DNA from: Glycera tridactyla | Taxonomy: Eukaryota | DNA length: 64,000 bases | NCBI GenBank assembly: GCA_965644265.1 | Contig: OZ286472.1 | Span: 53,382,001-53,446,000, forward strand | Direction: 5' to 3' | Part shown: positions 23,476-50,300 of the stretch, piece by piece | Numbering within the stretch: position 1 is the first letter of the stretch | Layout: the number at the start of each line of letters is the position of its first letter | Made by a program: the position numbers and the translations under genes | The notes under the pieces: model-generated | The model's database searches: none | The model's input: only the letters and a program-made list of their open reading frames with translations | What the model was told of the DNA's origin: nothing

Positions 23476-24477
23476 GGGCTATTCCATTTATTAAGGAGTG
23501 GGGGGGCCGGTCTGGAACCGAAATGAAAAAGCGGGGGTGGGGGGGTCTCTGAAAAATCGAAAGCGGGGGTGGGGGGGGGGGGGGTCTCAGAAAAATCGAA
23601 AGCGGGGGCGATATTAGGTGAAAATCGAAAGCGGGGGGCGATATTAGGGGAAAATCCGGAAGCGGGGGTTGGTGATGATCGGAAAAATTGGGAAGCGGGG
23701 GAGAGGCGGAAATCAGAACTTTCGTGTTGAAAACCGACCAAAAACACCAAATCCGGCGACTATTAGTCAATATATTGCCGTCTCTTCGACGTGGCTCGTG
23801 TTCGTCATGGGCGCCGCCATCTTGGTTATCAAATCCAAGTCGGCAAACCGTGACATTTTTTCGATGGGCACATGAATAATGCGATAAAATGCCCGCAAAA
23901 TGGCGGATCCTCTTGTAAATGGCGATTAAGTGACAGAAAAATGTCCAAAATCGAAAAATGCGATGAATATCAACGAAAGGAACCGAAAATAATTTGTCAC
24001 GCTGGCGGCCACGTCTTCTGTGTATCACAGGCGCTGGCGGATTCGGCCGCCATCTACCGGCGGAACCCGGAGTTGTCGACGCGAAACACGAGATGGCGGG
24101 TCGAATTATTCGAGAAACACGTGTTCGGCACGCAGACCGCCATCTTGAATGCAAGCACGATTCTAGCGCGATTTTTTTCATTAATCATGGATTCTTGGGA
24201 TAAAACGCTGACAGATTCCAGATCATCCTTGTAAATTGCGATTGATCATCAGAATAATGTCAATTATCATGAAATTTGACGTATTTGTCATCTCAGCCTC
24301 GTTTTCGGGAAGCGGGGGGGGGGGGGGGGGGGGTGTCGCTTTCGGAAACCAGCGGCGAAAAATTAAAAAGCGGGGGTGGGGGAGGGTCAGAATAATCAAA
24401 AAGCAGGGGTGGGGGGGGGGGTGTAATTTTTTTTGGCTGACCGGCCCCCCCCCCACCCTTTTTAAATGGAATAGCCC
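23476..24477. mobile_element. PIF/Harbinger-type MITE (~1 kb)
   Basis: TTA|GGGCTATTCCATTTA ... TAAATGGAATAGCCC|TTA; perfect 15-bp TIR and 3-bp TSD; subterminal AAAATCGAAAGCGGGGG tandem repeats. Confidence 0.9.
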
Positions 24478-32621: not shown

Positions 32622-33026
32622 TAGTGTTGGGAATCGGTTGCAAATTTACCATTGACGATTGGTTGGACTGAACCAACCGATGATTGGTTGCAATCGGTTC
32701 GGCCATCCTGCATTCCATCAGTCACTGGGGTGATTGGAGACCTGGTTTTGGTAATCCTCACTTGAGTGGAAGAAGAATGCAACACTTAGTTTCTGCACAT
32801 TTGCCCATACTAGTGCACCCAACACTGGAATTATCAAAGTGATGAGCCTGAATGCTCACATTGTAATTTAACAGAATATCCAATTTTCTAGCATTCGCAT
32901 GCATGAAGATTGATCTCATATATCCTGAACCGATTGTAATCAATTGCGAATTTTCCAACCAATCATCAGAATTGGTACTGATTCCAATCGATCATCGGTT
33001 ATTTTCCAATCATCAGCCCAACACTA
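32622..33026. mobile_element. hAT-type MITE, 8-bp TSD
   Basis: GTGTGCGC|TAGTGTTGGG ... CCCAACACTA|GTGTGCGC. Confidence 0.9.
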
Positions 33027-33823
33027 GTGTGCGCGTGTGCGTGCGTTCGTGTGTGAAGTATGTAGCGGTGTTTAGTGAAGAAACAAGCTGGATTTATTCT
33101 AATCTGATTCCAGACTATCAAACTCCAAAAGAAAGTTGACCCCGTGCGCCACCGTCTTGGATGACCGCTTCTGTTAACATTCCTTCTTGTTATTTTTGTT
33201 TGAATTCCTCACGAGAAATTATATAAATATATTCAACAAGACTGTGTCAGTTTCACACTTAAATTCGCGGGAATACAGATTTTGTGTCAAAAAATCCCTG
33301 AAAATTAGCATTGTGCGCCAGTTGACGCACGAACATGAAGGACGAGCAGGAATCGTGCACTCTGATGGCTATGCCGCTTTTTGCCAGGTTCCCACAGGCG
33401 CACACTGGCACTTGTAGCACTCCTCAAGGAGGGACATTTTCGGTGAGTCCGCCCATCAGTAGATCTGCGTTCGCATTCTAGGCACGGCATGATCATATCA
33501 TCTCCTGGTCACATTCTTCCTGATAAAATTGTGAACAAAACAAGTGTCACAAGAGAAGTGGGACTGACAGAATCAGGACAACTCGTGGCCGGGACCACTC
33601 GTACCCGGGATTTGAGACAGGTTGTAACCCGTACGTAACAAGTATGTGGAAGCACTTGTACCCTCGGCGATCATGAGTTCACGGGGAGGCTGATTGACAC
33701 CTTGCGGTCTCGTGACACGAGTCGTGAGTCCCGTACTCAGAACTCAGAATCTTCATTTAAACGATGTTTGAAGCAACAAAAATCGCCTAAATTTCACTGA
33801 TAGTTAGTTATGCTTATTGGTAA

Positions 33824-34423
33824 TGTTACGCGCCAACGGCCGATCAGCGCAATCGGCCTATAGCGCTGCGCCAACGGCGGACCGCTTGTTGGCACCATGA
33901 TCGATCGATCGCGGAACAATCAATGGATGGCAAGCCAATTGACATATTTCATTCGCTAAATACATTGAGATATGAAGAAAACTAAATTCCCCATCGATTG
34001 GATGACCAACGTTTTGATTTCAATGTATTTATGACGTTAAATCTTGGCCGGAAGTGGGCGATATCGGATGTAAACAATTGCCGCCATCTTGTTTTTTCAC
34101 TCGCCGATCTCTCACTTTGATGCTGGATATTTCAGCAGCTGCTCAATATACAGCAAAAGCAAAATATGGGGTACTATAGGCATGAGCTATAAGATTATTT
34201 GTTCGAAGTTTCATAATTTTCCAATGTGTTTATCCTCTCCAAATACGAGTGCAAAGTTACCATTCACGGCAAACTTTCGTAATTGTGCCATGCTATGTGC
34301 GCCAAACCTCCTGCACGGCTGTCGATAGCGCAGCGCCATCGACCGATTCCTGCGCCAACAAGCGATCGGCCGTTGGCGCAGCGCCATCGGCCGATCGCGC
34401 AGATCCGTCGATGGCGCGTAACA
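33824..34423. mobile_element. Ginger-like (TGT...ACA) MITE, 4-bp TSD
   Basis: GTAA|TGTTACGCGCCAACGGCCGATC ... GATCCGTCGATGGCGCGTAACA|GTAA; ~35-bp imperfect TIR. Confidence 0.7.
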
Positions 34424-34611
34424 GTAATAATCGCTAGAATGATCATCCAAGAATTTCCAAAAGTTTTCCGATAATCAACTGATAATCAGAAAACCGCCGC
34501 TGTTACGACTTGTCCCGGAGATAGGCGGGGTACGAGCAGTCTCGGTTACAAGCTGTCCGACATTCGGAACTGACTGTATGGGTGTGTCATCAGGTCGCGG
34601 ACGTCTCCATT

Positions 34612-35495
34612 GGGCTACGTAGCTTATTTGGAGGGCGTTAGCCAATTAACGGACGCCTCGCAATTGACGGACGCTTAAAAAACCACAGATTCTCGCCATT
34701 ATATGTGGACTTTCATTAAAAATCCCACACAAACTGATGAAAGGCATAATAACCATCAAACGTGAGAAGTTTGGAGGTGATCGGCCACGTTTCCGATCGC
34801 TGGTGACGAATTTTCTGAGTAACAATGATCCCGAATCTCAACCTTCCTCCAGTTTATCCTCGACGCGCAAAATTGAGAAAGCCGTCGCAACGAGATTTTC
34901 CTCATGTACAAAGAAAACAAAATTCCCCAACGATTGTATGTATTACATTTTGAATCCTATGTATTACTTTTTTTATATCGTGGCCGAAAGTCGGCGATAT
35001 CGGATGTAAACAATCGCCGCCATCTTGGTTTTTCACTCGCCGACTTCCCAACTTTGAAGCTGGATATCTCAGCGACTAGCCAATATAGAATGAAACCGAA
35101 TACAGGATTCTAAAAAGGAGAGTTGGGAGATGACTCGCTCGAAGTTTCATTTTTTTTCAACGAGTTTATCCCCTCCAAATACGAGTGCCAAGTAACGACT
35201 TCACGGCAAACTTTCGCCATTGCGAATCACGCGCTCCCGCCACTCCTTGGTGGTGACACCTGGCGGCGATCACCCGTTATGGATTCCCACACAGAACGCC
35301 GCCATTTGCCGTTATTTCTTCTCTAAATCCAAACAAACTATGGTTTTCTGACATATTAGTATGGTTACTGGTGATACTTTGACTATTTATGGCCGTATAT
35401 CGCTAATATTCGTAATTTTCCGAAATCGTGATGACGTCATCGGAAAACCCCCGTCCGTCAAATTACTAGCGCCCTCCAATTAAGCTACGTAGCCC
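34612..35495. mobile_element. PIF/Harbinger-type MITE, 3-bp TSD, nested in a TIR
   Basis: ATT|GGGCTACGTAGCTTATTTGGAGGGCG ... CGCCCTCCAATTAAGCTACGTAGCCC|ATT. Confidence 0.82.
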
Positions 35496-36774
35496 ATTTC
35501 AGATAGCTAGTTTGGTCAATTTTCATATTTCATCAATGCTTCCTCTTATTGAACCCATCTTATGGTACATACTGTAAGAATTCTAACAAAGAAAAGATGA
35601 TGAAAATCGGTTCAACGGTTTCCGCGTTATTGCAGTTTTACTCATGCTAATTTCCACATTTCGTGAGAACCTGAAACATGTTGCTCAGGCAAGCGTACAA
35701 AACTGGTCAAGAACCCATCTTCAAACCTTCACTGTGTAGATAATAATGCATTTAGAGATGATTCTCAAGGCAAATCTTTTTCTTCTCAACACAGACTTGA
35801 GAAGATTGAACGGAAACTTGGTGTGGATCAAGCCGTAGAGAGAATAATTGACTTCAAAACTAGGTTTTTGTTCACTTTGACCAAGTGGACTTTGTCATTT
35901 TCAGGATCCGGCATGCCAAAGGGCTGAAAATGTACTTTTTTCCCAATATCTTCATGAATAAAGGTGATAGAGACTTCATTTTTCCTTCAAATTGAAGATC
36001 CTCCAGAGGAGTATTTGCAGAGTGAGAATTAGGAACAGTTATCCTAGGTGATCATCAGCAAAAAATTCACAAAATTAAATTTTCAACGGCAAGAATGTAA
36101 CATACAGGAGCATCATACATGTACATGTATATGTATATTTTTCCTTTGAACCTTGGGCATGATGAGCAAAGAAAATCTATTTTGTTATCTAAAAAACGAA
36201 GATTATGAGAAGCAATCATTTTCAAAATTAAAAAATTTAATATTCAAAATTTCATTTCAATGATTTGACTATGTGAGAGGCTGGGAATGTACATTCCTTC
36301 TGCTCCATTCACATCTTGATGGGTACTTTTGCAATATTACAAGAAGCAATCATGTTCAAAATTCAAAAGATTGAAATTTGAAATTTGAAATTTTGAAATT
36401 TGAAATTCGAAATTAAAAAATTTGAAATTCAAGATTTGAAAATTTGGGATTAAAAATTAAAAAATTTATTTTAGTGATTTGAACCCCACACGTGGATTTC
36501 AATATTTCAAAGGTGATCGATTGTCATCCAAGTGAGCAGATGTCAAGGCTCAGCCCACCATCTGAATACCTGATCACAGGCTCTCCTAATTGCAATTGAC
36601 TTCTGCTCACTTCCCACCCCCCCCCCCCCCTTACCCCTTCCCCGCTCATTGCTCAACACTTCCCATCACACACTCTCATGCACAATAATATTGTATTGGC
36701 CATGAATATTGTTCTCCAAAAACATGAGAAAGAGAGGAATGCTGAAAAATGATGATTGCCACAAATTTACACTC

Positions 36775-37331
36775 GTTGCAAAATATTGACTTTGAGCATG
36801 AAAAAAATGATGAAAATTGTATAAAATTAGGCATCCCGTGTTTTGAATAAAGTCATTTTGTTTACATAATGAGTAACTTTTTGCAACATTTTAGGTGGGA
36901 GAATGAAGAATAATAGGTATATCCTCGATACAAGTTTACTTTTGTTGCAAAATATTGACTTTGAGCATGAAAAAAATGATGAAAATTGTATAAAATTAGG
37001 CATCCTGTTTTTTGAAAAAAGTCATTTTTTTCACATTATGATTCACTTTTTGCAACATTTCAGGTGGGAGAATGATGAATTATAGGTATATCCTTGATAC
37101 AAATTTACTTTTGTTGCAAAATATTTACTTTGAGCATGAAAAAATGATGAAAATTGTATAAAATTAGGCATCCCGTTTTTTGAATAAAGTCATTTTTTTT
37201 TTCATAATGAGTGACTTTTTGCAACATTTTAGGTGGGAGAATGAAGAATAATAGATATATCCTCGATACAAATTCACTTTTGTTGCAAAATATTGACTTT
37301 GAGCATGAAAAAATAATGAAAATTGTATAAA
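36775..37331. repeat. 169-bp tandem repeat, ~3.3 units
   Basis: GTTGCAAAATATT(G/T)ACTTTGAGCATG recurs at 36775, 36944, 37113 and 37282. Confidence 0.95.
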
Positions 37332-37662
37332 GTTCATTTCAACTCTCAGTCAAGTATAGCTCTGCTCATACTGGCCCGATCTGTGATAAACAAAAAGCAC
37401 AAGAAAATTCAGGAAAAACATGACAAACTGTGAAAATGTGAAGTTTCTATCCCTACTGGCTCAGTGCGGAAATAGCTACCAAATCGGAGGTGTCAACATA
37501 GCATGCTTTCTGAGATATGATCGACGGCGAGCGGAGCATCTGCTGGACTGCTAATGCAACACTTGACAAGCTGTAAGCAGTCTCTCCCATCTACAACCAC
37601 TTTTTCAAAGTGCAAACCCGCAGTGAGCCACTCCACTTACAAAGGTGATCTATATACCAATG

Positions 37663-38429
37663 CAGGGTGTTAGCCAGCCAGCCAAAACAGGGTGTCCAAA
37701 TATTTCCCAAAGCCAGAAAAATAGCGCGGACGACATTTTCTGAAAATGAGAAAAATAACGCGGACGGGTAGTTTCAGCATGCCCTGAAATAATATTACAA
37801 TTCTTTCCTGGATATCTTATATTGATTTATAAATGACCTTCATTCAACTTAGTTTTCCTATCACAGGAGTTATTGCTAGCTGTCTCTTAGTCAGTTTCAA
37901 AATTTGAGCTTCACTTGAAGACAGGAAATATCTGAAATGCTGCAATTCATCATCAAGCACTGGTCTTGATCCATTATATGAATCTGTTCTGTTATAGAAC
38001 ACAATTTTATATTCTAAAGTTGAATCTTGACTGTAGTAATGCCAATAAACCAATCAGGCTTTATAGTGGCAGTGATGTAATCAAGCATTTTAGGCAATGA
38101 AAACAGATCAGATTATTTGTGAGCAGGCTATCAGGTAGCAGTATGATTACCTCAATGAGGTTGGGATGACCACTGGCTCGACCCTCCACAAAGTTTGAGG
38201 TGGAAGGTAATGAGCACTGACTAATTAGGCAGGGATTAACTGTCTTGTGTTTGATTACCAAATTTGATGCTCTGGAGAGCAACTGGTATTGTTTGTAGTA
38301 CTATTGTCATAGTATTGACTAAGGGGATTGATGGACGCCCTACTGGGCACCCTGTTGATTTAAGAGGCCGTCCAATATCAAGATAGGGGGTCCAAATGAC
38401 GGCTGGACGTATGGCTGGCTAACACCCTG
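37663..38429. mobile_element. hAT-type MITE, 8-bp TSD
   Basis: TACCAATG|CAGGGTGTTAGCCAGCC ... GGCTGGCTAACACCCTG|TACCAATG; perfect 17-bp TIR and TSD. Confidence 0.93.
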
Positions 38430-39184
38430 TACCAATGGATTCATCATGAACTGAGGTTTCAAGTGCAAATTGTCTATTCAGGGGTTAATAAGACGATATT
38501 TCGAGTAAAATGGGTTTGAAATTTATTTCGACATTCACTCGAATGTATCTCCACTCCTACTCGTCAGATCGACTTTGTACAAGTAGCCCAGGAAAATTTA
38601 GGAAATGGAGGACAAACTGTGAAAGTATGAACTTTCTATGCCTACTGGCTCAGTGCGGAAATGGCCATTAAATCGGAGGTGTCAACATCGTGTTCACGGC
38701 GGATTTTTCAGTAGCACTCAGCTCGCTGAGCATGAGTGAACAAATCAAGATGGCTGTGTTCACATCTGCGCCATATCGTCGGTTCTTCACCAAATCCTTC
38801 TCAACTTTGGAATGGAATAGAGAAGGAGTTCGTGCATCTGTCCTCCAATTCTGAGCGAAAAATATTGGAAACTTTCTGAGATATGATCAGGGGAAGCTCG
38901 AAATCTCGGCTCGGCGCTCTCGGCGAGCATGATTCGCATGGCGAGCGGAGCAGGGGCCGGACTAGCTATTTCAGACGTTGTCCGCGACCTGGTCATACCC
39001 TGGATTCCAGGCTTGAAGAAAGCGGGGGGTTGTGTTTGGGGTCTGATTTGGTCGATGAGGCATACGAGGGACTAAGGGACAGAGATTCCCCCATGATCCC
39101 AGGCCATGATCTCATTGAATGGCTCCCATCGTACCTGCATGATTACATGGCAATTTCTGACACATGACACGAGCAACCTGTCAG

Positions 39185-40127
39185 CAGGTCGCGGACGACG
39201 TCCGTATTGGCCAACGTTGGCCAATTGAGCAGCGTTGGCCAATTGACGGACGGGAAATACCCTGATCACGTGACCGCGCTAAAAATAGATTTCGATAAAA
39301 TCGCGAATATTCGCAAATAGCAGCCATAAACTGATGACTACTCCAACTTCCATCAACAAACATCATCTTTTGTTGAAGAGCGATCGTTTTCATTGACTTT
39401 GAGATGCAAAAAGCGGCATTCTGAGCGAGAATCCATTGCCCGGCGATCTCCGCCAGATGTTAACAACATGGGATGGCAGGAGCATGTCATTCGCCATGGC
39501 AAAAGTTTGCCGTAAAATCGTAACTTTGCACTCGTATTTGGAGTTGATATACATCTTGAAAAATTATGAAACTTTGATCGGGACATCTCCTACCCATGTT
39601 CCTTACACCCCCATGGTCGCTTTTGCTGTAAGACATGCGGTTGGTGAAATATCCAGCATCAAAGTTGTGAAGTCGGCGAGTGAAAAACAAGATGGCGGCG
39701 ATTGTTCACATCCGAAACCGCCGACTTTCGGCCACAATATCAGAAAATGAGGACATAGGATTCGAAATGTAGTACATACAATCGATGGGAAATTTTGTTT
39801 TCTTTATACATACGAAAAATCTCATTGCGCCGGCTTTCTCAATTTTGCGCGCAGAGGAATTACCGCAGGAAGGTTGAGATTCGGGATCGTTGTCACTTAG
39901 AAAATTCGTCACCAGCGCTCAGAAACGAGACCCGTATCCTCGAAACTTCTCATGTTCAAAGATTATCATACATTCTATTTGATGGTGTACGCTTTTGAGT
40001 GAAAATTTACTTCTAATGGCGAGAATATGTGCTTTCTCAAGCGTCCGTTAATTGGCAGACGTTGGTCAATTGGCCAACGCTGCTCAATTGGCAAGCGTTG
40101 GCCAATTTGGACGTCGTCCGCGACCTG
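39185..40127. mobile_element. CAGG-ended MITE, 5-bp TSD
   Basis: GTCAG|CAGGTCGCGGACGACGTCC ... GGACGTCGTCCGCGACCTG|GTCAG; 70-85 bp TIR built of TTGGCCAA repeats. Confidence 0.9.
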
Positions 40128-41062
40128 GTCAGTGTCACGGTCGATCCAGTTCCGGGGAGTGGCAAACTGCGGTCGGCAAAAACTATCTCAGAACGCGATA
40201 TTCCCAACAATTATATCGATCAGAACCAGCCTATGGAAGCTAGAGATACTTGCCATTTTGTCGGTTCTTGATTTATAGGCGCACCAGGATTCAACAGTGT
40301 TCAAAACGGTAATTAAACAGAATAAATACGGGATCGCCTACCACACAACCGGATTCCTGAGTACTACGTCACGGAAAATGGGGCACTTCTAGTTCTCCTT
40401 ATTGACGCGCAGGGGCGCTAGGCGAGCGTATTCGAGATCGATCATTGTGTTTCCCCGAGTGCGCTAGATTTAGTCATTCAAGAGCGGTTTGTTTGATTGT
40501 TTGTTTGAGTTTAACATCACTTAAACCAGCATGGGTTATATCGGACTGAAAAAAAAACCTGAAAATGCTGAAGAATAGAGTCACTGGCCTGCCGGGGGCC
40601 GTCCACACTCTTTGCGAAAGAATGTCCCGAGTGTCATGTACGTTGAGAGCGTATGCGTCAAGTAGCTAGGTCACGGGGACACACGAGTGGCCTCGCCACG
40701 AGACGCATACGCTCTCAACGTACACAACACGAGAAATATTCTGTATTTATCATCCGGTTATTGGATAGAAGAATGTATTACGTTAAATTTGCCATTTAGA
40801 TTGTGAAAAACGGACCAGCAGTTCATGAGCTACAGCGATTTTTCTAGAGGCATCTTTCCCAGTTAGTCCCGTGACGCTATACACAAATTGAATGCGCGAC
40901 ACTGCCAGTTGACCCTTGACCTCGATTGTTCTATGGTTACATGACGCGCAATGTAACCTCAAAAATTACACAATCCATACGTACATGCATGCTGCGCAGC
41001 GATTACATGCACGCTACAAGCGGCATCGGATGATAAAGCAGTGGATCTTTAACGTGTGTCAA

Positions 41063-41735
41063 CAGGTCAGGCTCCGCACATAGATTTACGTGCCGAGATA
41101 TTTCTAGTTCCTCCTCCGGTGTAACGTAGTGCAAGCGGACACGTTTTTCTTTGTATCGCGGTTGTCAGCATAAACTGATGGGCGTACTGTGTGAACAAGC
41201 GGGCGCTGCCGGATTCGGCCCTCCATCTACCGGCGAACCCTGGAGTTGTAGACGCAAAACACAAGATGGCGGGTCGAAATACGCTCAAAATTCGGACATG
41301 CTGATCTAAATCCTCATTTGCTCAAAAATGGCACATAGGATCGAAAATCGGCACATGGAATCGATAGAAAACAACCTAATGTACATATAGTCACATTGAA
41401 TACAACCGCCAGACTAATAGCAACAATTGTGCAGGGGTTGGAAGGTCTAGTTTCAGCCAGTTTGTTTACCTCTGCTTGACTTTGAACCCTACTCACTTCG
41501 CACAGGTGAGAGGAATCGGTATCGTTTTGATCTAGTGGACAGGGGACGAGCATGAATAAATTATAAATCAACTAATCAGAAGTGGCGTTATAAATCATAC
41601 TTGGAGAGAGGACGAAATGTAACACGAATTTGAATTGGCCGGACCCACTTCCGGTTCCTGATTTCGGCACGTAAATTTACGTGCCGCACATATTTTTACG
41701 CGCGGCACGTATTTTTACGCGTGGAGCCTGGCCTG
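41063..41735. mobile_element. CAGG-ended MITE, 5-bp TSD
   Basis: GTCAA|CAGGTCAGGCTCCGCAC..TTTACGTGCCG ... CGGCACGTATTTTTACGCGTGGAGCCTGGCCTG|GTCAA. Confidence 0.85.
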
Positions 41736-42203
41736 GTCAAGGAAGAGATTCCTATCAACACAGCCCGCCTTTGATATCCCAGTCGGCGTGCACTGGGCTC
41801 AGAATAGCCAACTTAAGAGAAGGCCGGTGGCGACATCCAGCGGCAGCGGATGCGTTTCTAACAAGACAAACAAACGACCACGCCATATTGAACCGTATTC
41901 ATTGCCATCGAGAGTCACTTCAAATTTTAGGTTTTCATATTCAATTCGATATACATGCATATACAAATATGAATATGGAAACTGTCATCACCATGGTAGT
42001 GGGCAAGGTTGCAGCTGTCGCAACCACCATCGTCTGCATGATAAGTTTAAGAAGCCTTTTATGAAAAGATTGAAAGTACATGTATATTCCAGAATATCGT
42101 GATATGAATTGTCCTTCAGTGATTACAAAGTCCCATCAGTGTGTGTGTGTGGGAGGGAGGGGGGTGTTGGCTGGGTGGATGGATGACTACCATTATTGTT
42201 TTA

Positions 42204-47307: not shown

Positions 47308-50300
47308 GATTGACGGACGTTTCGGCCAACGGCGTTTCGGCTTCGTAAGTTTCGGCCGGCGGACGTTTCGGCCAACGGCGATTCGGCCAACGGCGCCGGA
47401 CAATTCGGCCAGCGCTGTCTCTCTTCCTCTCTCTCTCTTTGCTGGCTGGTAGCCTATCAGACCTGTTGTAGTAATCAGAATACATGTGCTCATGATCTGT
47501 TGGTTCCTGTGTTTACTTGTGTAACGCCACGTTTTTGAACATGTGACGTTTGTTAGAATAACATGAACAATATAGGGATTTCTGGTAGCGGAATTCGCGG
47601 AATTCCTCTTTTGAGGCCCGCGGCACTAGTTTAACGCTACTAGATTGATAATTATTTCTTCCTACTCCAGAAGCATGAGATAGTTTCACTTCTATTAGTT
47701 GAAAAACAGTTGCAATCCTGTTAGTTTTCTAATATTAGGAGTTTCACCTATCTGGTTGTTGGTGTGGCAACTAGAGTTCGAGTTACACGCAGTGTACTCG
47801 CCGTTCGCGGCGGGTGCCCAGCTTGCAGTGTTTCTAGGGTGAAACAGTAAAAATGCGATATCTCCATGAATAATGGACGTAGGAAGACCATATTTTTACA
47901 CGATACGTATCTGTATTAGGGCTAAAGATATCCCGAAGATGGGAAGTGTATCTTTTGAGGCAAAATTGTTAGTCCGTGGGATAGACCGTTTATCGGACGG
48001 TTTTTTGCCAACATAGTTGATCACACAGTATAGTGAACGACTCCCTGAGCAGGAGGAGCTCGGAGTCGCGCAGGAGGAAAGTGATCTGCAATGTACATGC
48101 AATGTACATGTTTTCTCAGAAAATCTTCTGTAATTGATCTAGAAAAGTCTCGAGCGAATACTTTCGAGGTAGCTGACTCGAGGAGCTTGACATCGCTTCT
48201 CCCGCTCTTTTTTCCCGCTCTTTGCTGGCTCTTCAGGACGGATACATAAAAGTATTCCAGACAGGAGTTCTGGCACTTGGAAATTCTGTCCTGAAGAGTA
48301 CGCACCGGAGCTGAGGGAGTCGGGAGCAGAGAACATCTTGCTTCTCCAGTATCGCTGCACTGGAATAGAAACTATGGACTCCACTATATCGTCCTGAGCT
48401 CTACTACATCCAGTAAGTGTTCATGAGATTTAGAAATGTTTTAGGATCCTTTTAGGAGGCTTTATTAGGAGTCATTTTCCCCATTTGCCCAAATGGCCAT
48501 TTTTAGTATCATGCCATTTCATGTCATCGGATCTTCCGTGTTTTGTATTGAATGTACCATCTTTCGAGCATACGTGGTCAAAATCTAGAATTTGCATGTT
48601 TTTGGATGATTTTGGATCATTTTGGATGATAGGATTTTGTTCCATAAATGCCGTCCTGATCCAAACAACTAGCTGATAATTCTCGCGGATATTGGTAGTT
48701 CTATCTGTTTCTGTTAATTCCCTGTGCTGTTCTGGTGATTTTGGAACAAGTGGAACTGCGTGGAACTATGCCGTGTTCCTCCTGCGTTGTTCCCGGTGCA
48801 GTACGCCTGTTTGGGTGGAACAGGGCTATGCAGGAATTCGTAATATAGTATTTAACGCTTGGACTCACTGAATCCTCCGGGTGAGGGAAGCTGTGTGTAT
48901 GAACTGCTAACACGTCTCAATATAGCTCCTACCGATCAGATTCTGATCATCTGTGTAATATATCGGATTTCTGTGTGAATTAGATGATTGAATCATTCAA
49001 AATTCAATTATATTCACGGGATTTCTTTATAGGAATAATATTGTGAAAGGAATATTTCTGTAAGATCATTTTCAGTTGAAATATCAGCAGAGACGACTGT
49101 GTCTTTTCTCTCTGAATCTGTGTGTTTTTAGACCCGGCTACTCTACCAGTCCATGTGGGCTGAGTTGAAATGAACATGCCTATCTCGGTATGACAATGGC
49201 AGCTCGCTGTCATGTGTACTAACCAGGTCACCGCTAAGGTGAACTCTGCTGCTGGTTTCGTAAATAGCACACACAGCTGATCTGTTTTCTTTAGCTCCCT
49301 GATCATATGAATAGAGATCCAGTCAATCTTTTCTTTTCCGAATGAAATTCTTTATTGAAAAACGTATTTTCATTGAAACGGCTTGTTTTGAGAAGGTAAT
49401 AATCTAACGTCGTTCATATGGTGTGAAAATCTGGAATTCTTTGACGGTTAACCGATCGATTAATCGATTAATCGACCGATCAAATATGCTTCAATTTCAG
49501 TATTCTGAATTAATTTCGGCTTGCAAAAAGCTTGTTTATAAACGATCAAGTGCTAGGTTGATGGTATTTCAATTTTAATGACCACAACTGTCGTATTTGT
49601 CAATTGAAGATCCGGTGAAATGTTTTTGGTGCTCGTACTTGTAATAGACATGTAGGGGAGACGACAAACCGAGACTTGTTTTGTTTACACGTAGTGCCTG
49701 CTTGTGATTCATGTGCCCGGCCTGAATTTAGACTTTTTCAGAGGAGGTCCACTCTGATAAGCTTGATTCTGTCCTAAGCGCCGTATATCCTAAGCACGGA
49801 CCCGTCCTAAGCTTGCTTAGTCTTGTGTAATGTCCATGAGTCCCGTGACCTACTTTTTGAGGAAACCTCCGTATTGAGACCAACCTGTCACATGTGACCA
49901 CCTTGAGATTTTTAGTCTATATGATCTGCGACATCACGTTGGACTGTATTTTCGAAGGAAAATTCTTTTGGATTGATTTTAGACCTTCAAAATGCTGCAT
50001 TTGTAATTGTTTAGCTCTCGTAATGAATAAGCTGTTATACGCTGTCATTTGAGCTCCGAAATACTTTCTGAGCGATCTGGAATGAACAGCTGTTTCTGAC
50101 TGATCGGTCAGATGTAAACAATCCGCCATTTTGGATTTCCATCCGCCACATGTATGAGCCTCACTTTGAGCCTCCGATCCACTTTACACTTTTCAACATG
50201 TTTGAAACTTTTTCACTTTTGGATAAAAGCTTTTAGATGCTTTAGAATTGATCGGAATTGTTTCTCGTCGTGTGCGGATTGCTTTTATAGAACTTCAGTG

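What the first reader, a model, noticed from the sequence alone, without database searches (positions are those of the whole stretch)
33824..40127. One internal core carried by three different kinds of transposon ends
Seen: three neighbouring elements share homologous interiors but have unrelated termini and TSD lengths. They are TGTTACG/4-bp (33824-34423, Ginger-like), GGGCTACG/3-bp (34612-35495, Harbinger-like) and CAGGTCG/5-bp (39185-40127, inverted). The last two align over essentially the whole body up to the inner TIR motif CAATTRACGGACG. The first shares ~320 bp (33970-34290 vs 34915-35225), including GGATGTAAACAAT.GCCGCCATCTTG.TTTTTCACTCGCCGA. Identity is roughly 70-80% by eye. Known: MITE interiors normally descend with their own ends. 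Inference: a non-coding passenger cassette has swapped or recruited termini from several transposase systems. ATTGACGGACG also starts the MULE TIR at 47308.
Basis: partly seen in the sequence, partly recalled or inferred. Interest (0 to 1): 0.8.

Follow-up and report, generated by a model that had tools for sequence, protein, structure and literature searches.

The report
Chimeric MITEs sharing one internal segment
A non-coding stretch of about 320-360 bases sits inside three abundant families of small cut-and-paste transposons with unrelated ends, most likely because it was copied from one family into the next on two rare occasions; this is a clear example of a phenomenon already known, not a new kind of element.

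Summary
The shared core is real. E1 33971-34285, E2 34907-35222 and E3 39496-39808 are 76-78% identical.

- E2 does not end in GGGCTACG with a 3-bp duplication. That motif lies inside a ~66-bp TIR.
- 23 genomic copies show the family ends in CAGGTCGCGGAC with a 5-bp TSD, the same as E3.
- The window's E2 copy spans 34591-35503 plus 38976-38991 (TSD GTCAT). It is split by a 3,464-bp insertion.

So the window holds two end types: E1 (TGTTACG, 4 bp, Ginger2-like) and E2/E3 (5 bp). A third carrier exists elsewhere in the genome: family D, with an 8-bp TSD and about 26 copies.

All 129 near-complete cores that I held lie inside one of these three carriers. None stands alone. The core tree follows the carrier type. 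D nests inside a young E1 subfamily (AU p=0.0018), and E1+D attaches among the E2-like copies.

This fits two old segment captures, probably E2-like→E1 and then E1→D, followed by separate amplification. It does not fit ongoing end swapping or a separately mobile cassette.

Master lineages keep some blocks unchanged, while individual copies decay neutrally.

It is a new member of a known kind (chimeric MITEs; coral CMITEs). Interest is moderate.

The parts
33824..34423 (+). E1: a 600-bp non-autonomous element with termini TGTTACGC...GCGTAACA, 90-bp TIRs and a 4-bp TSD GTAA (33820-33823 and 34424-34427). It is Ginger2-like.
   Evidence: Family census: 15 of 22 copies have a perfect 4-bp TSD. A 97% identical copy is L002.
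33971..34285 (+). The shared core inside E1, as supported by BLAST. Weaker homology to E2-like copies probably extends to about 33946-34303.
   Evidence: (3,667 first-look candidates).
34591..35503 (+). E2, main part: the left tip CAGGTCGCGG^ACG (with a 3-bp deletion) through to ...CCCATTTCAGA. The TSD GTCAT is at 34586-34590.
34907..35222 (+). The shared core inside E2.
35504..38967 (.). An unrelated 3,464-bp insertion that splits E2's right TIR. Its termini are TAGCTAGT.../...ACTAGCT(A), with a 7-8-bp TSD ATTTCAGA (35496-35503 and 38968-38975). It holds 169-bp internal tandem repeats and its longest ORF is 94 aa.
38976..38991 (+). E2, the displaced right tip CGTTGTCCGCGACCTG. The second copy of the TSD GTCAT is at 38992-38996.
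39185..40127 (-). E3: a 943-bp element of the same CAGGTCGCGGAC / 5-bp-TSD kind, inverted relative to E2. Its TSD GTCAG is at 39180-39184 and 40128-40132.
39496..39808 (-). The shared core inside E3.
41063..41735 (-). F: a third CAGG-ended family (CAGGTCAGGCTCC...), 673 bp, with a 5-bp TSD GTCAA. It keeps a distant remnant of the left half of the core.
   Evidence: local alignment z=7.9, and two colinear HSPs of 77% over 44 bp and 94% over 16 bp.
47309..47319 (+). ATTGACGGACG at the tip of another element's TIR. It shares this 11-mer with the E2/E3 subterminal motif and nothing more.

Best explanation
What is shown: E1, E2/E3 and D are three families of non-coding, TIR-bounded cut-and-paste elements (MITEs). 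Their different tips and their 4-, 5- and 8-bp target duplications imply that they are moved by three different transposases. They share a ~320-360-bp internal segment.

What is inferred: the sharing arose through two rare, old segment transfers that produced chimeric elements. Each chimera then amplified under its own ends.

- The D capture from E1 is well supported. D's segment came from a young E1 subfamily, the one that contains the window's E1 copy.
- The direction of the E1-E2 event is a lean, about 65:35. E1 probably took its segment from an E2-like member of the CAGG-ended lineage, where the segment is part of a longer conserved body.
- The likeliest mechanism is template switching during repair of an excision gap (abortive gap repair) into a neighbouring element. 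The alternative is nested insertion followed by loss of the guest's ends. The dense nesting and adjacency of these families would favour either route.

The segment is not mobile on its own and encodes nothing detectable. Some of its blocks stay unchanged in the master lineages while individual copies decay neutrally. This suggests a cis effect on propagation rather than a host function.
For: - Family status and ends. TSD census: E1 15/22 perfect 4 bp, E2/E3 51/58 perfect 5 bp, D 4/5 perfect 8 bp.
- Abundance.
- No stand-alone core: all 129 near-complete cores in 349 kb sit in one of the three carriers, and the odd left flanks turned out to be old or nested E1 copies. The same holds for the 20 loci (L084-L103) fetched at core-motif sites taken in genome order.
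- The core tree follows the carrier: 6 changes against 59.9 shuffled. D is one clade (99) and E1+D is one clade (100).
- D nests in E1: the clade of D 11 + E1 5 scores 96/86. The AU test rejects E1 monophyly without D (p=0.0018, delta lnL 25.9).
- Consensus K2P distances: E1-D 0.048, E1-E2 0.136, E2-E3 0.133, E1-E3 0.207. D copies are youngest, at 0.032 from their consensus.
- E1 and D share a 27-bp deletion relative to all E2/E3 lineages. D's homology stops 30 bp before E1's on the right.
- In E2/E3 the core is not a separate block: the body from 90 to 720 is 86-100% identical between the two consensuses.
- Family F keeps a distant remnant of the core.
- The D-type TIR motif has 282 genome hits against ~26 D copies, and L022 shows a D-like tip with another interior.
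- Rate heterogeneity between lineages is strong (chi-square p=4e-9), yet private mutations are equally frequent in conserved and variable columns (1.46 vs 1.57 per column, p=0.6).
- Physical proximity: E1 and E2 lie 168 bp apart in the window, and an E3 copy is inserted in an E1 tip in L034.
Against: - The tree is unrooted, so the E1-versus-E2/E3 direction rests on the weak family F remnant and on parsimony.
- D's left limit nearly coincides with the left limit of E1/E2 homology. Independent captures from E1 at a structural hot spot, or a common core-only intermediate, could also explain that.
- No junction microhomology could be demonstrated on the diverged consensus sequences.
- No autonomous partner was identified for any of the three end types, so 'three transposases' is inferred from tips and TSD lengths alone.
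- Sampling was limited to 349 kb. Only 20 loci were fetched at core-motif sites taken in genome order, and the motif variants with A or C could not be fetched, so further carriers may exist.
- The clade tested by the AU test was named after the tree had been seen.
Confidence: 0.72

Rival explanations
1. The segment is a portable cis-acting module, for example a binding platform for a host factor. It raises the amplification success of whichever MITE carries it, so the chimeras that acquired it were the ones that proliferated. This adds selection to the capture story; it does not replace it.
For: - Blocks such as GGATGTAAACAATCGCCGCCATCTTG.TTTTTCACTCGCCGA and GTTTATCCCCTCCAAATACGAGTGCAAAGTTACGATTT are invariant across the E1, D, E2, E2b, E2c and E3 consensuses, while neighbouring blocks differ by up to 85% of columns (chi-square p=4e-9).
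- Private mutations show no such contrast, so the constraint acts on the masters and not on resident copies.
- The segment prospered under three end types.
- The authors of the coral CMITE paper speculated the same for their conserved internal region (PMC2872659).
Against: - Parts of the E2/E3 body outside the shared segment are as well or better conserved, so the captured piece is not specially the conserved part.
- D has only ~26 copies, which is not a success story.
- There are only two capture events, so no statistics on selection are possible.
- No RNA structure covariation and no Rfam match.
- The YY1-like reading of AAGATGGCGGC rests on memory and was not tested.
Confidence: 0.15
2. The core is an independent small mobile element (a SINE or MITE) that inserted separately into an ancestor of each host family.
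For: - The core has roughly similar limits in all carriers: the left limit is near ATTTC(A/C), and the right limit falls within 30 bp.
- It is very abundant, with 3,667 first-look candidates.
Against: - None of the 129 near-complete copies stands alone.
- The core has no terminal repeats, no poly-A or tRNA-like head, and no flanking duplication inside the hosts.
- The right limits differ: D stops at GGCAAAC, while E1 and E2 continue for 30 bp or more.
- D's core nests inside E1's diversity, and E1 and D share a private 27-bp deletion. D therefore copied from E1, not from a free element.
- In E2/E3 the core is continuous with conserved flanks.
Confidence: 0.06
3. Each family independently captured the same host genomic sequence (transduplication, in the manner of Pack-MULEs).
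For: MITEs and MULEs are known to acquire host fragments, and the CMITE authors raised this possibility (PMC2872659).
Against: - No carrier-free copy was seen among the sampled sites.
- The hierarchical relationship among the cores (D inside E1, with E1+D attached among the E2-like copies) and the shared deletion argue for serial copying between elements.
- The longest ORF overlapping E1, E2 or E3 is 104 aa, and none is shared by the three cores.
Confidence: 0.04
4. It is a local rearrangement or assembly artefact confined to this window.
For: The three elements lie within 6.3 kb of each other.
Against: Every combination recurs on many chromosome-scale contigs with different TSDs.
Confidence: 0.01

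Closest known systems
CMITE families of Acropora corals (Wang, Zhang, Meyer & Matz 2010, PMC2872659)
   Same: Several MITE families share an internal region that is more conserved between families than their TIRs are. The origin of the internal region is unknown, and a role in transposition has been suspected. Full-size elements form head-to-tail arrays that share the TSD; here this is seen for E3 (L035, and the coordinates).
   Different: All CMITE families are piggyBac-type (TTAA, CCYT tips), so one superfamily is involved. Here the carriers have 4-, 5- and 8-bp TSDs and unrelated tips. The order of transfer can be partly read from the tree.
Chimeric non-autonomous DNA transposons formed by abortive gap repair or template switching (Rubin & Levy 1997 for Ds; discussed for MITE origins in PMC3814204); rice Kiddo/MDM-1 sharing an internal stretch despite different TIRs and TSDs (Yang et al. 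2001, recalled from memory and not re-read)
   Same: The recipient keeps its own ends and subterminal regions, while its interior is replaced by a stretch copied from another template. The result is a new family that is still mobilised by the recipient's transposase.
   Different: No microhomology or filler signature could be read at the junctions here. There are two successive transfers of the same segment, and two of the three resulting families reach roughly a thousand copies or more.
Ginger2 DNA transposons (Bao, Kapitonov & Jurka 2010, PMC2836005), for E1
   Same: TGTNR tip (TGTTA), long TIRs (90 bp, within the 50-180 bp range), a 4-bp TSD and AT-rich targets.
   Different: No integrase-like transposase gene with these TIRs was found or sought, and the RTATAY preference is only partly visible.
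hAT superfamily, 5-bp-TSD subgroup ('hAT5' in Repbase/RepeatMasker, from memory), for E2/E3 and F
   Same: CAG tips. The target is palindromic, with T at TSD position 2 and A at the last-but-one position (45/51 each), like the hAT consensus nTnnnnAn.
   Different: The TSD is 5 bp, not 8. No hAT transposase was found between long-range CAGGTCG tip pairs on contig C1.
Conserved central domains of SINE superfamilies (CORE-, V-, Deu-, Meta-SINEs; from general knowledge)
   Same: A conserved middle module is shared by families whose heads and tails differ and depend on different partners.
   Different: Those are retroposons with RNA intermediates. Here the carriers are cut-and-paste DNA elements.

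Membership tests
MITE (non-autonomous TIR element) | Small size, TIRs, TSDs that differ between loci, no coding capacity, many copies | tested here: met
   Sizes are 600, ~935, ~950 and 661 bp. TIRs are 90, ~66, 63 and ~60 bp. TSD census. The longest ORF is 104 aa.
Ginger2 (E1) | Termini TGTNR...YNACA | tested here: met
   TGTTACGC...GCGTAACA in the window and in 21 further paired copies. Criterion taken from PMC2836005.
Ginger2 (E1) | 4-bp TSD and TIRs of about 50-180 bp | tested here: met
   15/22 copies have a perfect 4-bp TSD. The TIR is 90 bp.
Ginger2 (E1) | AT-rich RTATAY target | tested here: inconclusive
   6 of 15 perfect TSDs are NATA (AATA x3, TATA x2, CATA). The others are AT-rich but varied.
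Ginger2 (E1) | Autonomous partner encoding a Gypsy-integrase-like transposase with the same TIRs | not tested
   The true ends are CAGGTCGCGGAC with 5-bp TSDs in 51/58 copies. 'ATT' is internal to the TIR.
hAT (E2/E3) | 8-bp TSD | tested here: not met
   The TSD is 5 bp in 51/58 copies. This is compatible only with the 5-bp subgroup, which I recall from memory.
hAT (E2/E3) | Target with T at position 2 and A at the last-but-one position; CAG/TAG tips | tested here: met
   T 45/51, A 45/51, C at the last position 29/51, and the tip is CAGG.
hAT (E2/E3) | Autonomous copy with a hAT transposase between the same TIRs | tested here: inconclusive
   There are 96 Dimer_Tnp_hAT matches genome-wide. 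None lies within the long CAGGTCG tip pairs listed on C1. The other contigs were not checked.
Transib (E2/E3) | 5-bp TSD plus CAC-type, RSS-heptamer-like tips | tested here: not met
   The TSD length fits, but the tips are CAGGTCG. The tip criterion is from memory.
CMITE-like 'conserved interior, divergent TIRs' | The internal region is more similar between families than the TIRs are | tested here: met
   Core consensus identity between carriers is 84-93%, while the arms show no significant similarity.
CMITE-like 'conserved interior, divergent TIRs' | All families belong to one superfamily (piggyBac, TTAA) | tested here: not met
   The TSDs are 4, 5 and 8 bp.
Independent nested element (core as its own transposon) | Own termini or TSD, and free-standing copies | tested here: not met
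   0 of 129 copies is free-standing. There is no flanking duplication, and the right limits are unequal.

The most novel reading that the evidence does not exclude
The shared segment is a transposase-independent 'amplification module'. On this reading its invariant blocks, including the ~45-bp stretch around AAGATGGCGGC, recruit a host factor or a chromatin state that raises excision, reinsertion or copy gain for any TIR pair placed around it. That would explain why the chimeras carrying it became dominant under a Ginger2-like system and a 5-bp-TSD system and then seeded a third family.
Probability: 0.12. Interest if true: 0.75.

Novelty: new member of a known kind. Interest (0 to 1): 0.4.

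Why it matters
This locus gives a well-documented animal example of how MITE families arise as chimeras. The same internal stretch was passed between elements that depend on different transposases, and the order of transfer is partly readable from the sequences.

There is a practical consequence for repeat annotation. Automatic repeat libraries will tend to merge or misclassify these families through the shared core, and inner TIR motifs can be mistaken for element ends, as happened here.

The contrast between constrained blocks in the master lineages and neutral decay of individual copies yields a testable question: do internal MITE sequences contribute to propagation independently of the transposase?

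Tried and rejected
- Rfam scan of 33000-41000: only sub-threshold chance hits.
- RNAalifold on 12 cores from all lineages: covariation term +0.52, with one compensatory pair in 31. No structured RNA.
- ORF scan: the longest ORF is 104 aa, and none is shared by the three cores.
- 'Odd' left flanks of some cores looked like further carriers. They proved to be old E1 subfamilies or E1 nested in E1.
- Two 'E1' cores that fell with E3 in the tree are old, long-branched E1 copies with the same core limits.
- Short extra matches between the E1 arms and the E2/E3 arms (GCCAATTGAC, and E1 58-101 against E2 655-698) are at chance level.
- The 11-mer shared with the MULE-like element does not extend.
- The search for a hAT transposase between distant CAGGTCG tips on C1 found nothing.
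- D-type tips outside D copies: one is D's own displaced end (L014). One is a true different element (L022).
- Literature searches for 'chimeric MITE' and the like returned mostly papers on mite allergens. The lotus TE paper was not relevant.


Full report
**Setting.** The window is G000:C34:53382001-53446000 of a 2.04-Gb, 207-contig animal genome. The finding concerns three small repeats at 33824-40127.

**Checking the observation.**
- E1 152-462 matches E2 300-611 at 77.3% and matches E3 (minus strand) at 76.5%.
- E2 and E3 match over ~700 bp at 78%.
- E1 has 90-bp TIRs (82%) and the TSD GTAA.
- E3 has 63-bp TIRs (94%) and the TSD GTCAG.

One detail did not fit.

**The true ends of E2.** A genome search with 34560-35545 returned at least 40 copies at 83-96% identity. 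All begin at query position 32, which is window 34591, and not at 34612.
- I fetched 23 of them. In the alignment every copy starts CAGGTCGCGGACAACGTCTCC-ATTGGGCTACGTAGC and ends GCTACGTAGCCCATTTCAGACGTTGTCCGCGACCTG, flanked by 5-bp TSDs (TCAAA, ATGAC, GTTAT, ATTAC and so on).
- The window copy appeared to lack its last 16 bases. A pattern search found them at 38976-38991.
- Between 35503 and 38968 lies a 3,464-bp element with TAGCTAGT tips and a 7-8-bp duplication ATTTCAGA.
- With that insertion removed, the E2 copy is complete and is flanked by GTCAT on both sides.

E2 and E3 are two subfamilies of one kind of element. At the consensus level they are 86% identical over their full length. The window therefore holds two end types, not three.

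**A third end type elsewhere.** Searching the genome with the E1 core gave 3,667 first-look candidates. Of the 30 best loci, two thirds are E1 copies. Ten are a different element, family D.
- D is 661 bp long, with ends GATCTATGGACGATTCACCGCCC... and ...GGGCGGTGAATCGTCCTGAGACC and 8-bp TSDs.
- D has only about 26 copies at 91-96% identity.
The three kinds are E1 (4 bp), E2/E3 (5 bp) and D (8 bp).

A census of paired ends in the held DNA gave these results:

| Family | Copies with a perfect TSD | TSD length |
|---|---|---|
| E1 | 15 of 22 | 4 bp |
| E2/E3 | 51 of 58 | 5 bp |
| D | 4 of 5 | 8 bp |

Genome-wide counts at up to 1 mismatch, against the backwards-read control:

| Pattern | Hits | Control |
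|---|---|---|
| 24-nt core motif | 944 | 0 |
| CAGGTCGCGGACRACGTC | 1,558 | 5 |
| E1 tip 22-mer | 1,079 | 0 |

**Is the core a separate element?** I held 349 kb in total: the window plus 103 loci. Twenty of those loci (L084-L103) were fetched at core-motif sites taken in genome order.
- This DNA contains 141 core hits, 129 of them near-complete.
- Clustering their flanks gave three groups: E2/E3, E1 and D.
- The few odd left flanks were old E1 subfamilies, or E1 nested in E1.
- No core stands alone. None has its own repeats or a flanking duplication.
- In E2/E3 the core is not a distinct block. The two consensuses are 86-100% identical from about position 90 to 720, and the core (317-635) is simply part of that body.

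**Limits of the shared stretch.** Consensus comparisons:

| Pair | Positions | Identity |
|---|---|---|
| E1 vs E2 | E1 145-461 vs E2 317-635 | 86.8% |
| E1 vs D | E1 123-450 vs D 79-414 | 92.6% |
| D vs E2 | D 113-414 vs E2 321-624 | 83.6% |

A multiple alignment with E2-like copies from the motif-sampled loci adds three points.
- The extra 22 bp shared by E1 and D on the left are also homologous to E2/E3, across a 27-bp deletion that only E1 and D carry.
- On the right, E1 stays similar to some E2-like copies up to about E1 position 478-480.
- D stops at GGCAAAC, 30 bp earlier.

**Phylogeny.** In a tree of 116 cores the carrier label needs 6 changes, where 3 is the minimum and shuffled labels need 59.9.
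- D is one clade (99). E1+D is one clade (100). That clade attaches next to the E2-like copies L095, L096 and L034.
- In a more careful tree of E1, D and outgroups, D (100/99) lies inside a supported set of 16 rows that includes the window's E1 copy (96/86).
- E1 was monophyletic in 0 of 200 bootstrap trees. The AU test rejects E1 monophyly without D (p=0.0018). The caveat is that this clade was named after the tree had been seen.
- K2P distances between core consensuses are E1-D 0.048, E1-E2 0.136, E2-E3 0.133 and E1-E3 0.207. D copies are only 0.032 from their consensus, against 0.08-0.09 for the other families.

The transfer from E1 to D is therefore well supported.

The direction between E1 and E2/E3 cannot be read from an unrooted tree. 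I lean towards E2-like→E1 for two reasons.
- In the CAGG-ended lineage the segment is embedded in a longer conserved body.
- A third, distantly related CAGG-ended family with a 5-bp TSD sits in the same window (F, 41063-41735, TSD GTCAA). It keeps a weak but colinear remnant of the core's left half: z=7.9 against shuffles, with HSPs of 77% over 44 bp and 94% over 16 bp.

Against this lean, D's left limit nearly coincides with the E1/E2 homology limit. Captures out of E1 at a structural hot spot would also explain that.

**Mechanism (inferred).**
- The recipients keep their TIRs plus about 30-250 bp of subterminal sequence, and have an interior copied from another element. Abortive gap repair with template switching produces exactly this pattern (reviewed for MITE origins in PMC3814204).
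- Nested insertion followed by loss of the guest's ends would give the same product.
- Opportunity is ample. These families are densely nested and adjacent: E1 and E2 lie 168 bp apart here, an E3 copy sits in an E1 tip in L034, and several loci hold three to five cores.
- D-type TIR motifs are about four times more frequent than D copies can account for (282 hits). One D-like tip with a different interior was seen (L022). Both observations fit a pre-existing recipient family.

**Constraint.**
- Across the lineage consensuses, variable columns are strongly clumped (chi-square 68 on 14 df, p=4e-9). Some 20-column windows have 0-5% variable columns and others up to 85%.
- Private, single-copy substitutions are equally frequent in invariant and variable columns (1.46 vs 1.57 per column, p=0.6, with or without CpG sites).
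- Resident copies therefore decay neutrally, but the lineages that kept amplifying kept certain blocks.
- This points to a cis role in propagation, not a host function. It does not show that the captured piece is special, because other parts of the E2/E3 body are equally conserved.
- No RNA family, no structural covariation and no coding capacity were found.

**Classification.**
- E1 meets the Ginger2 criteria that can be read from DNA (PMC2836005): a TGTNR tip, a 90-bp TIR, a 4-bp TSD and AT-rich targets. The RTATAY preference is only partly visible, and no transposase was sought.
- E2/E3 and F have CAG tips and a palindromic target, with T at TSD position 2 and A at position 4 in 45 of 51 sites each. 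That is the hAT pattern on a 5-bp duplication. No hAT transposase was found between distant tips on C1, so this remains a lead.
- D has an 8-bp TSD and atypical tips, and its superfamily is open.
- The Harbinger call for E2 fails.

**Comparison with what is known.**
- The closest published parallel is the coral CMITE group. [quoted passage not shown] All of those families are piggyBac-type.
- Sharing across superfamilies was, as I recall, reported for rice Kiddo and MDM-1. I could not re-read that paper.
- The present case is thus a new, well-resolved example of a known phenomenon. It has the added points of two serial transfers and three TSD classes.

**Earlier notes of this scan.** Another first-stage note (s1-335608) described three CAGG-ended elements at 34586-41740 that duplicate GTCAN. 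My results agree: the TSDs are GTCAT, GTCAG and GTCAA. Following that note's right-hand coordinate led me to family F.

**Limits.**
The A and C motif variants, the candidate autonomous copies and further F copies could not be read.
- Copy numbers are pattern counts, not curated counts.
- No stretch of N was touched, and nothing here looked human or viral.

Noticed in passing
window 35504-38967: A 3,464-bp non-coding element with TAGCTAGT tips and a 7-8-bp TSD (ATTTCAGA), inserted in E2's right TIR. It carries about four 169-bp tandem repeats at 36761-37440 and a 175-bp direct repeat at 37325 and 38514.
   Followed up: partly
L032-L083 (51 sites); window 34586-34590 and 39180-39184: The CAGGTCG elements have a strong palindromic target: C at -2, then a TSD of (G/A)-T-N-A-C, then G at +2/+3 after the TSD. 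ATTAC and GTAAC are the commonest TSDs.
   Followed up: yes
L035:1501-3390; also G000:C31:19508658-19510537, C4:105580693-105582027 and C11:46183008-46184897: Two E3-type copies of different subfamilies (72-80% identical) lie head to tail, exactly 5 bp apart, and share one TSD (ATTAC). This points to repeated insertion at the duplicated site beside a resident copy, like the CMITE tandem arrays.
   Followed up: partly
L060:2560-3276, L102:636-1541, L091, L093: E1 copies are repeatedly nested in other E1 copies at the same internal position (about E1 200-204, inside the core). This looks like an insertion hot spot.
   Followed up: partly
L034:~1496-1500: An E3 copy is inserted exactly in the GTAAC of an E1 terminus (ggcgcGTAAC|CAGG...). 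E1 tips contain the preferred target of the CAGG-ended family.
   Followed up: no
G000:C1:63658086, 63659746, 63661406: Three CAGGTCG tips in the same orientation, spaced exactly 1,660 bp apart. This suggests a tandem array whose unit includes an E3 end.
   Followed up: no
G000:C1:2035689-2049583 and C1:107128098-107138740: Inward-facing CAGGTCG tip pairs 13.9 kb and 10.6 kb apart. They could be autonomous or heavily interrupted copies. The sequence could not be fetched.
   Followed up: no
L022:2026-2060: A D-like terminus (GGTCTAATGACGATTCACCGCCCATGC) is followed by an interior unrelated to D. Genome-wide, the D TIR motif has 282 hits against about 26 D copies.
   Followed up: partly
No partner TIR is present in the window, and there is a 79% copy in L034. 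The heptamer GCCAACG occurs 13 times in the window against about 4 expected, 11 of them in the TIRs of E1, E3 and this element.
   Followed up: partly
window 41063-41735: Family F: 673 bp, tips CAGGTCAGGCTCC / GGAGCCTGGCCTG, TSD GTCAA, with subterminal TTTACGTGCCG repeats. An 80-bp piece at 87% identity also lies at window 24030-24108.
   Followed up: partly
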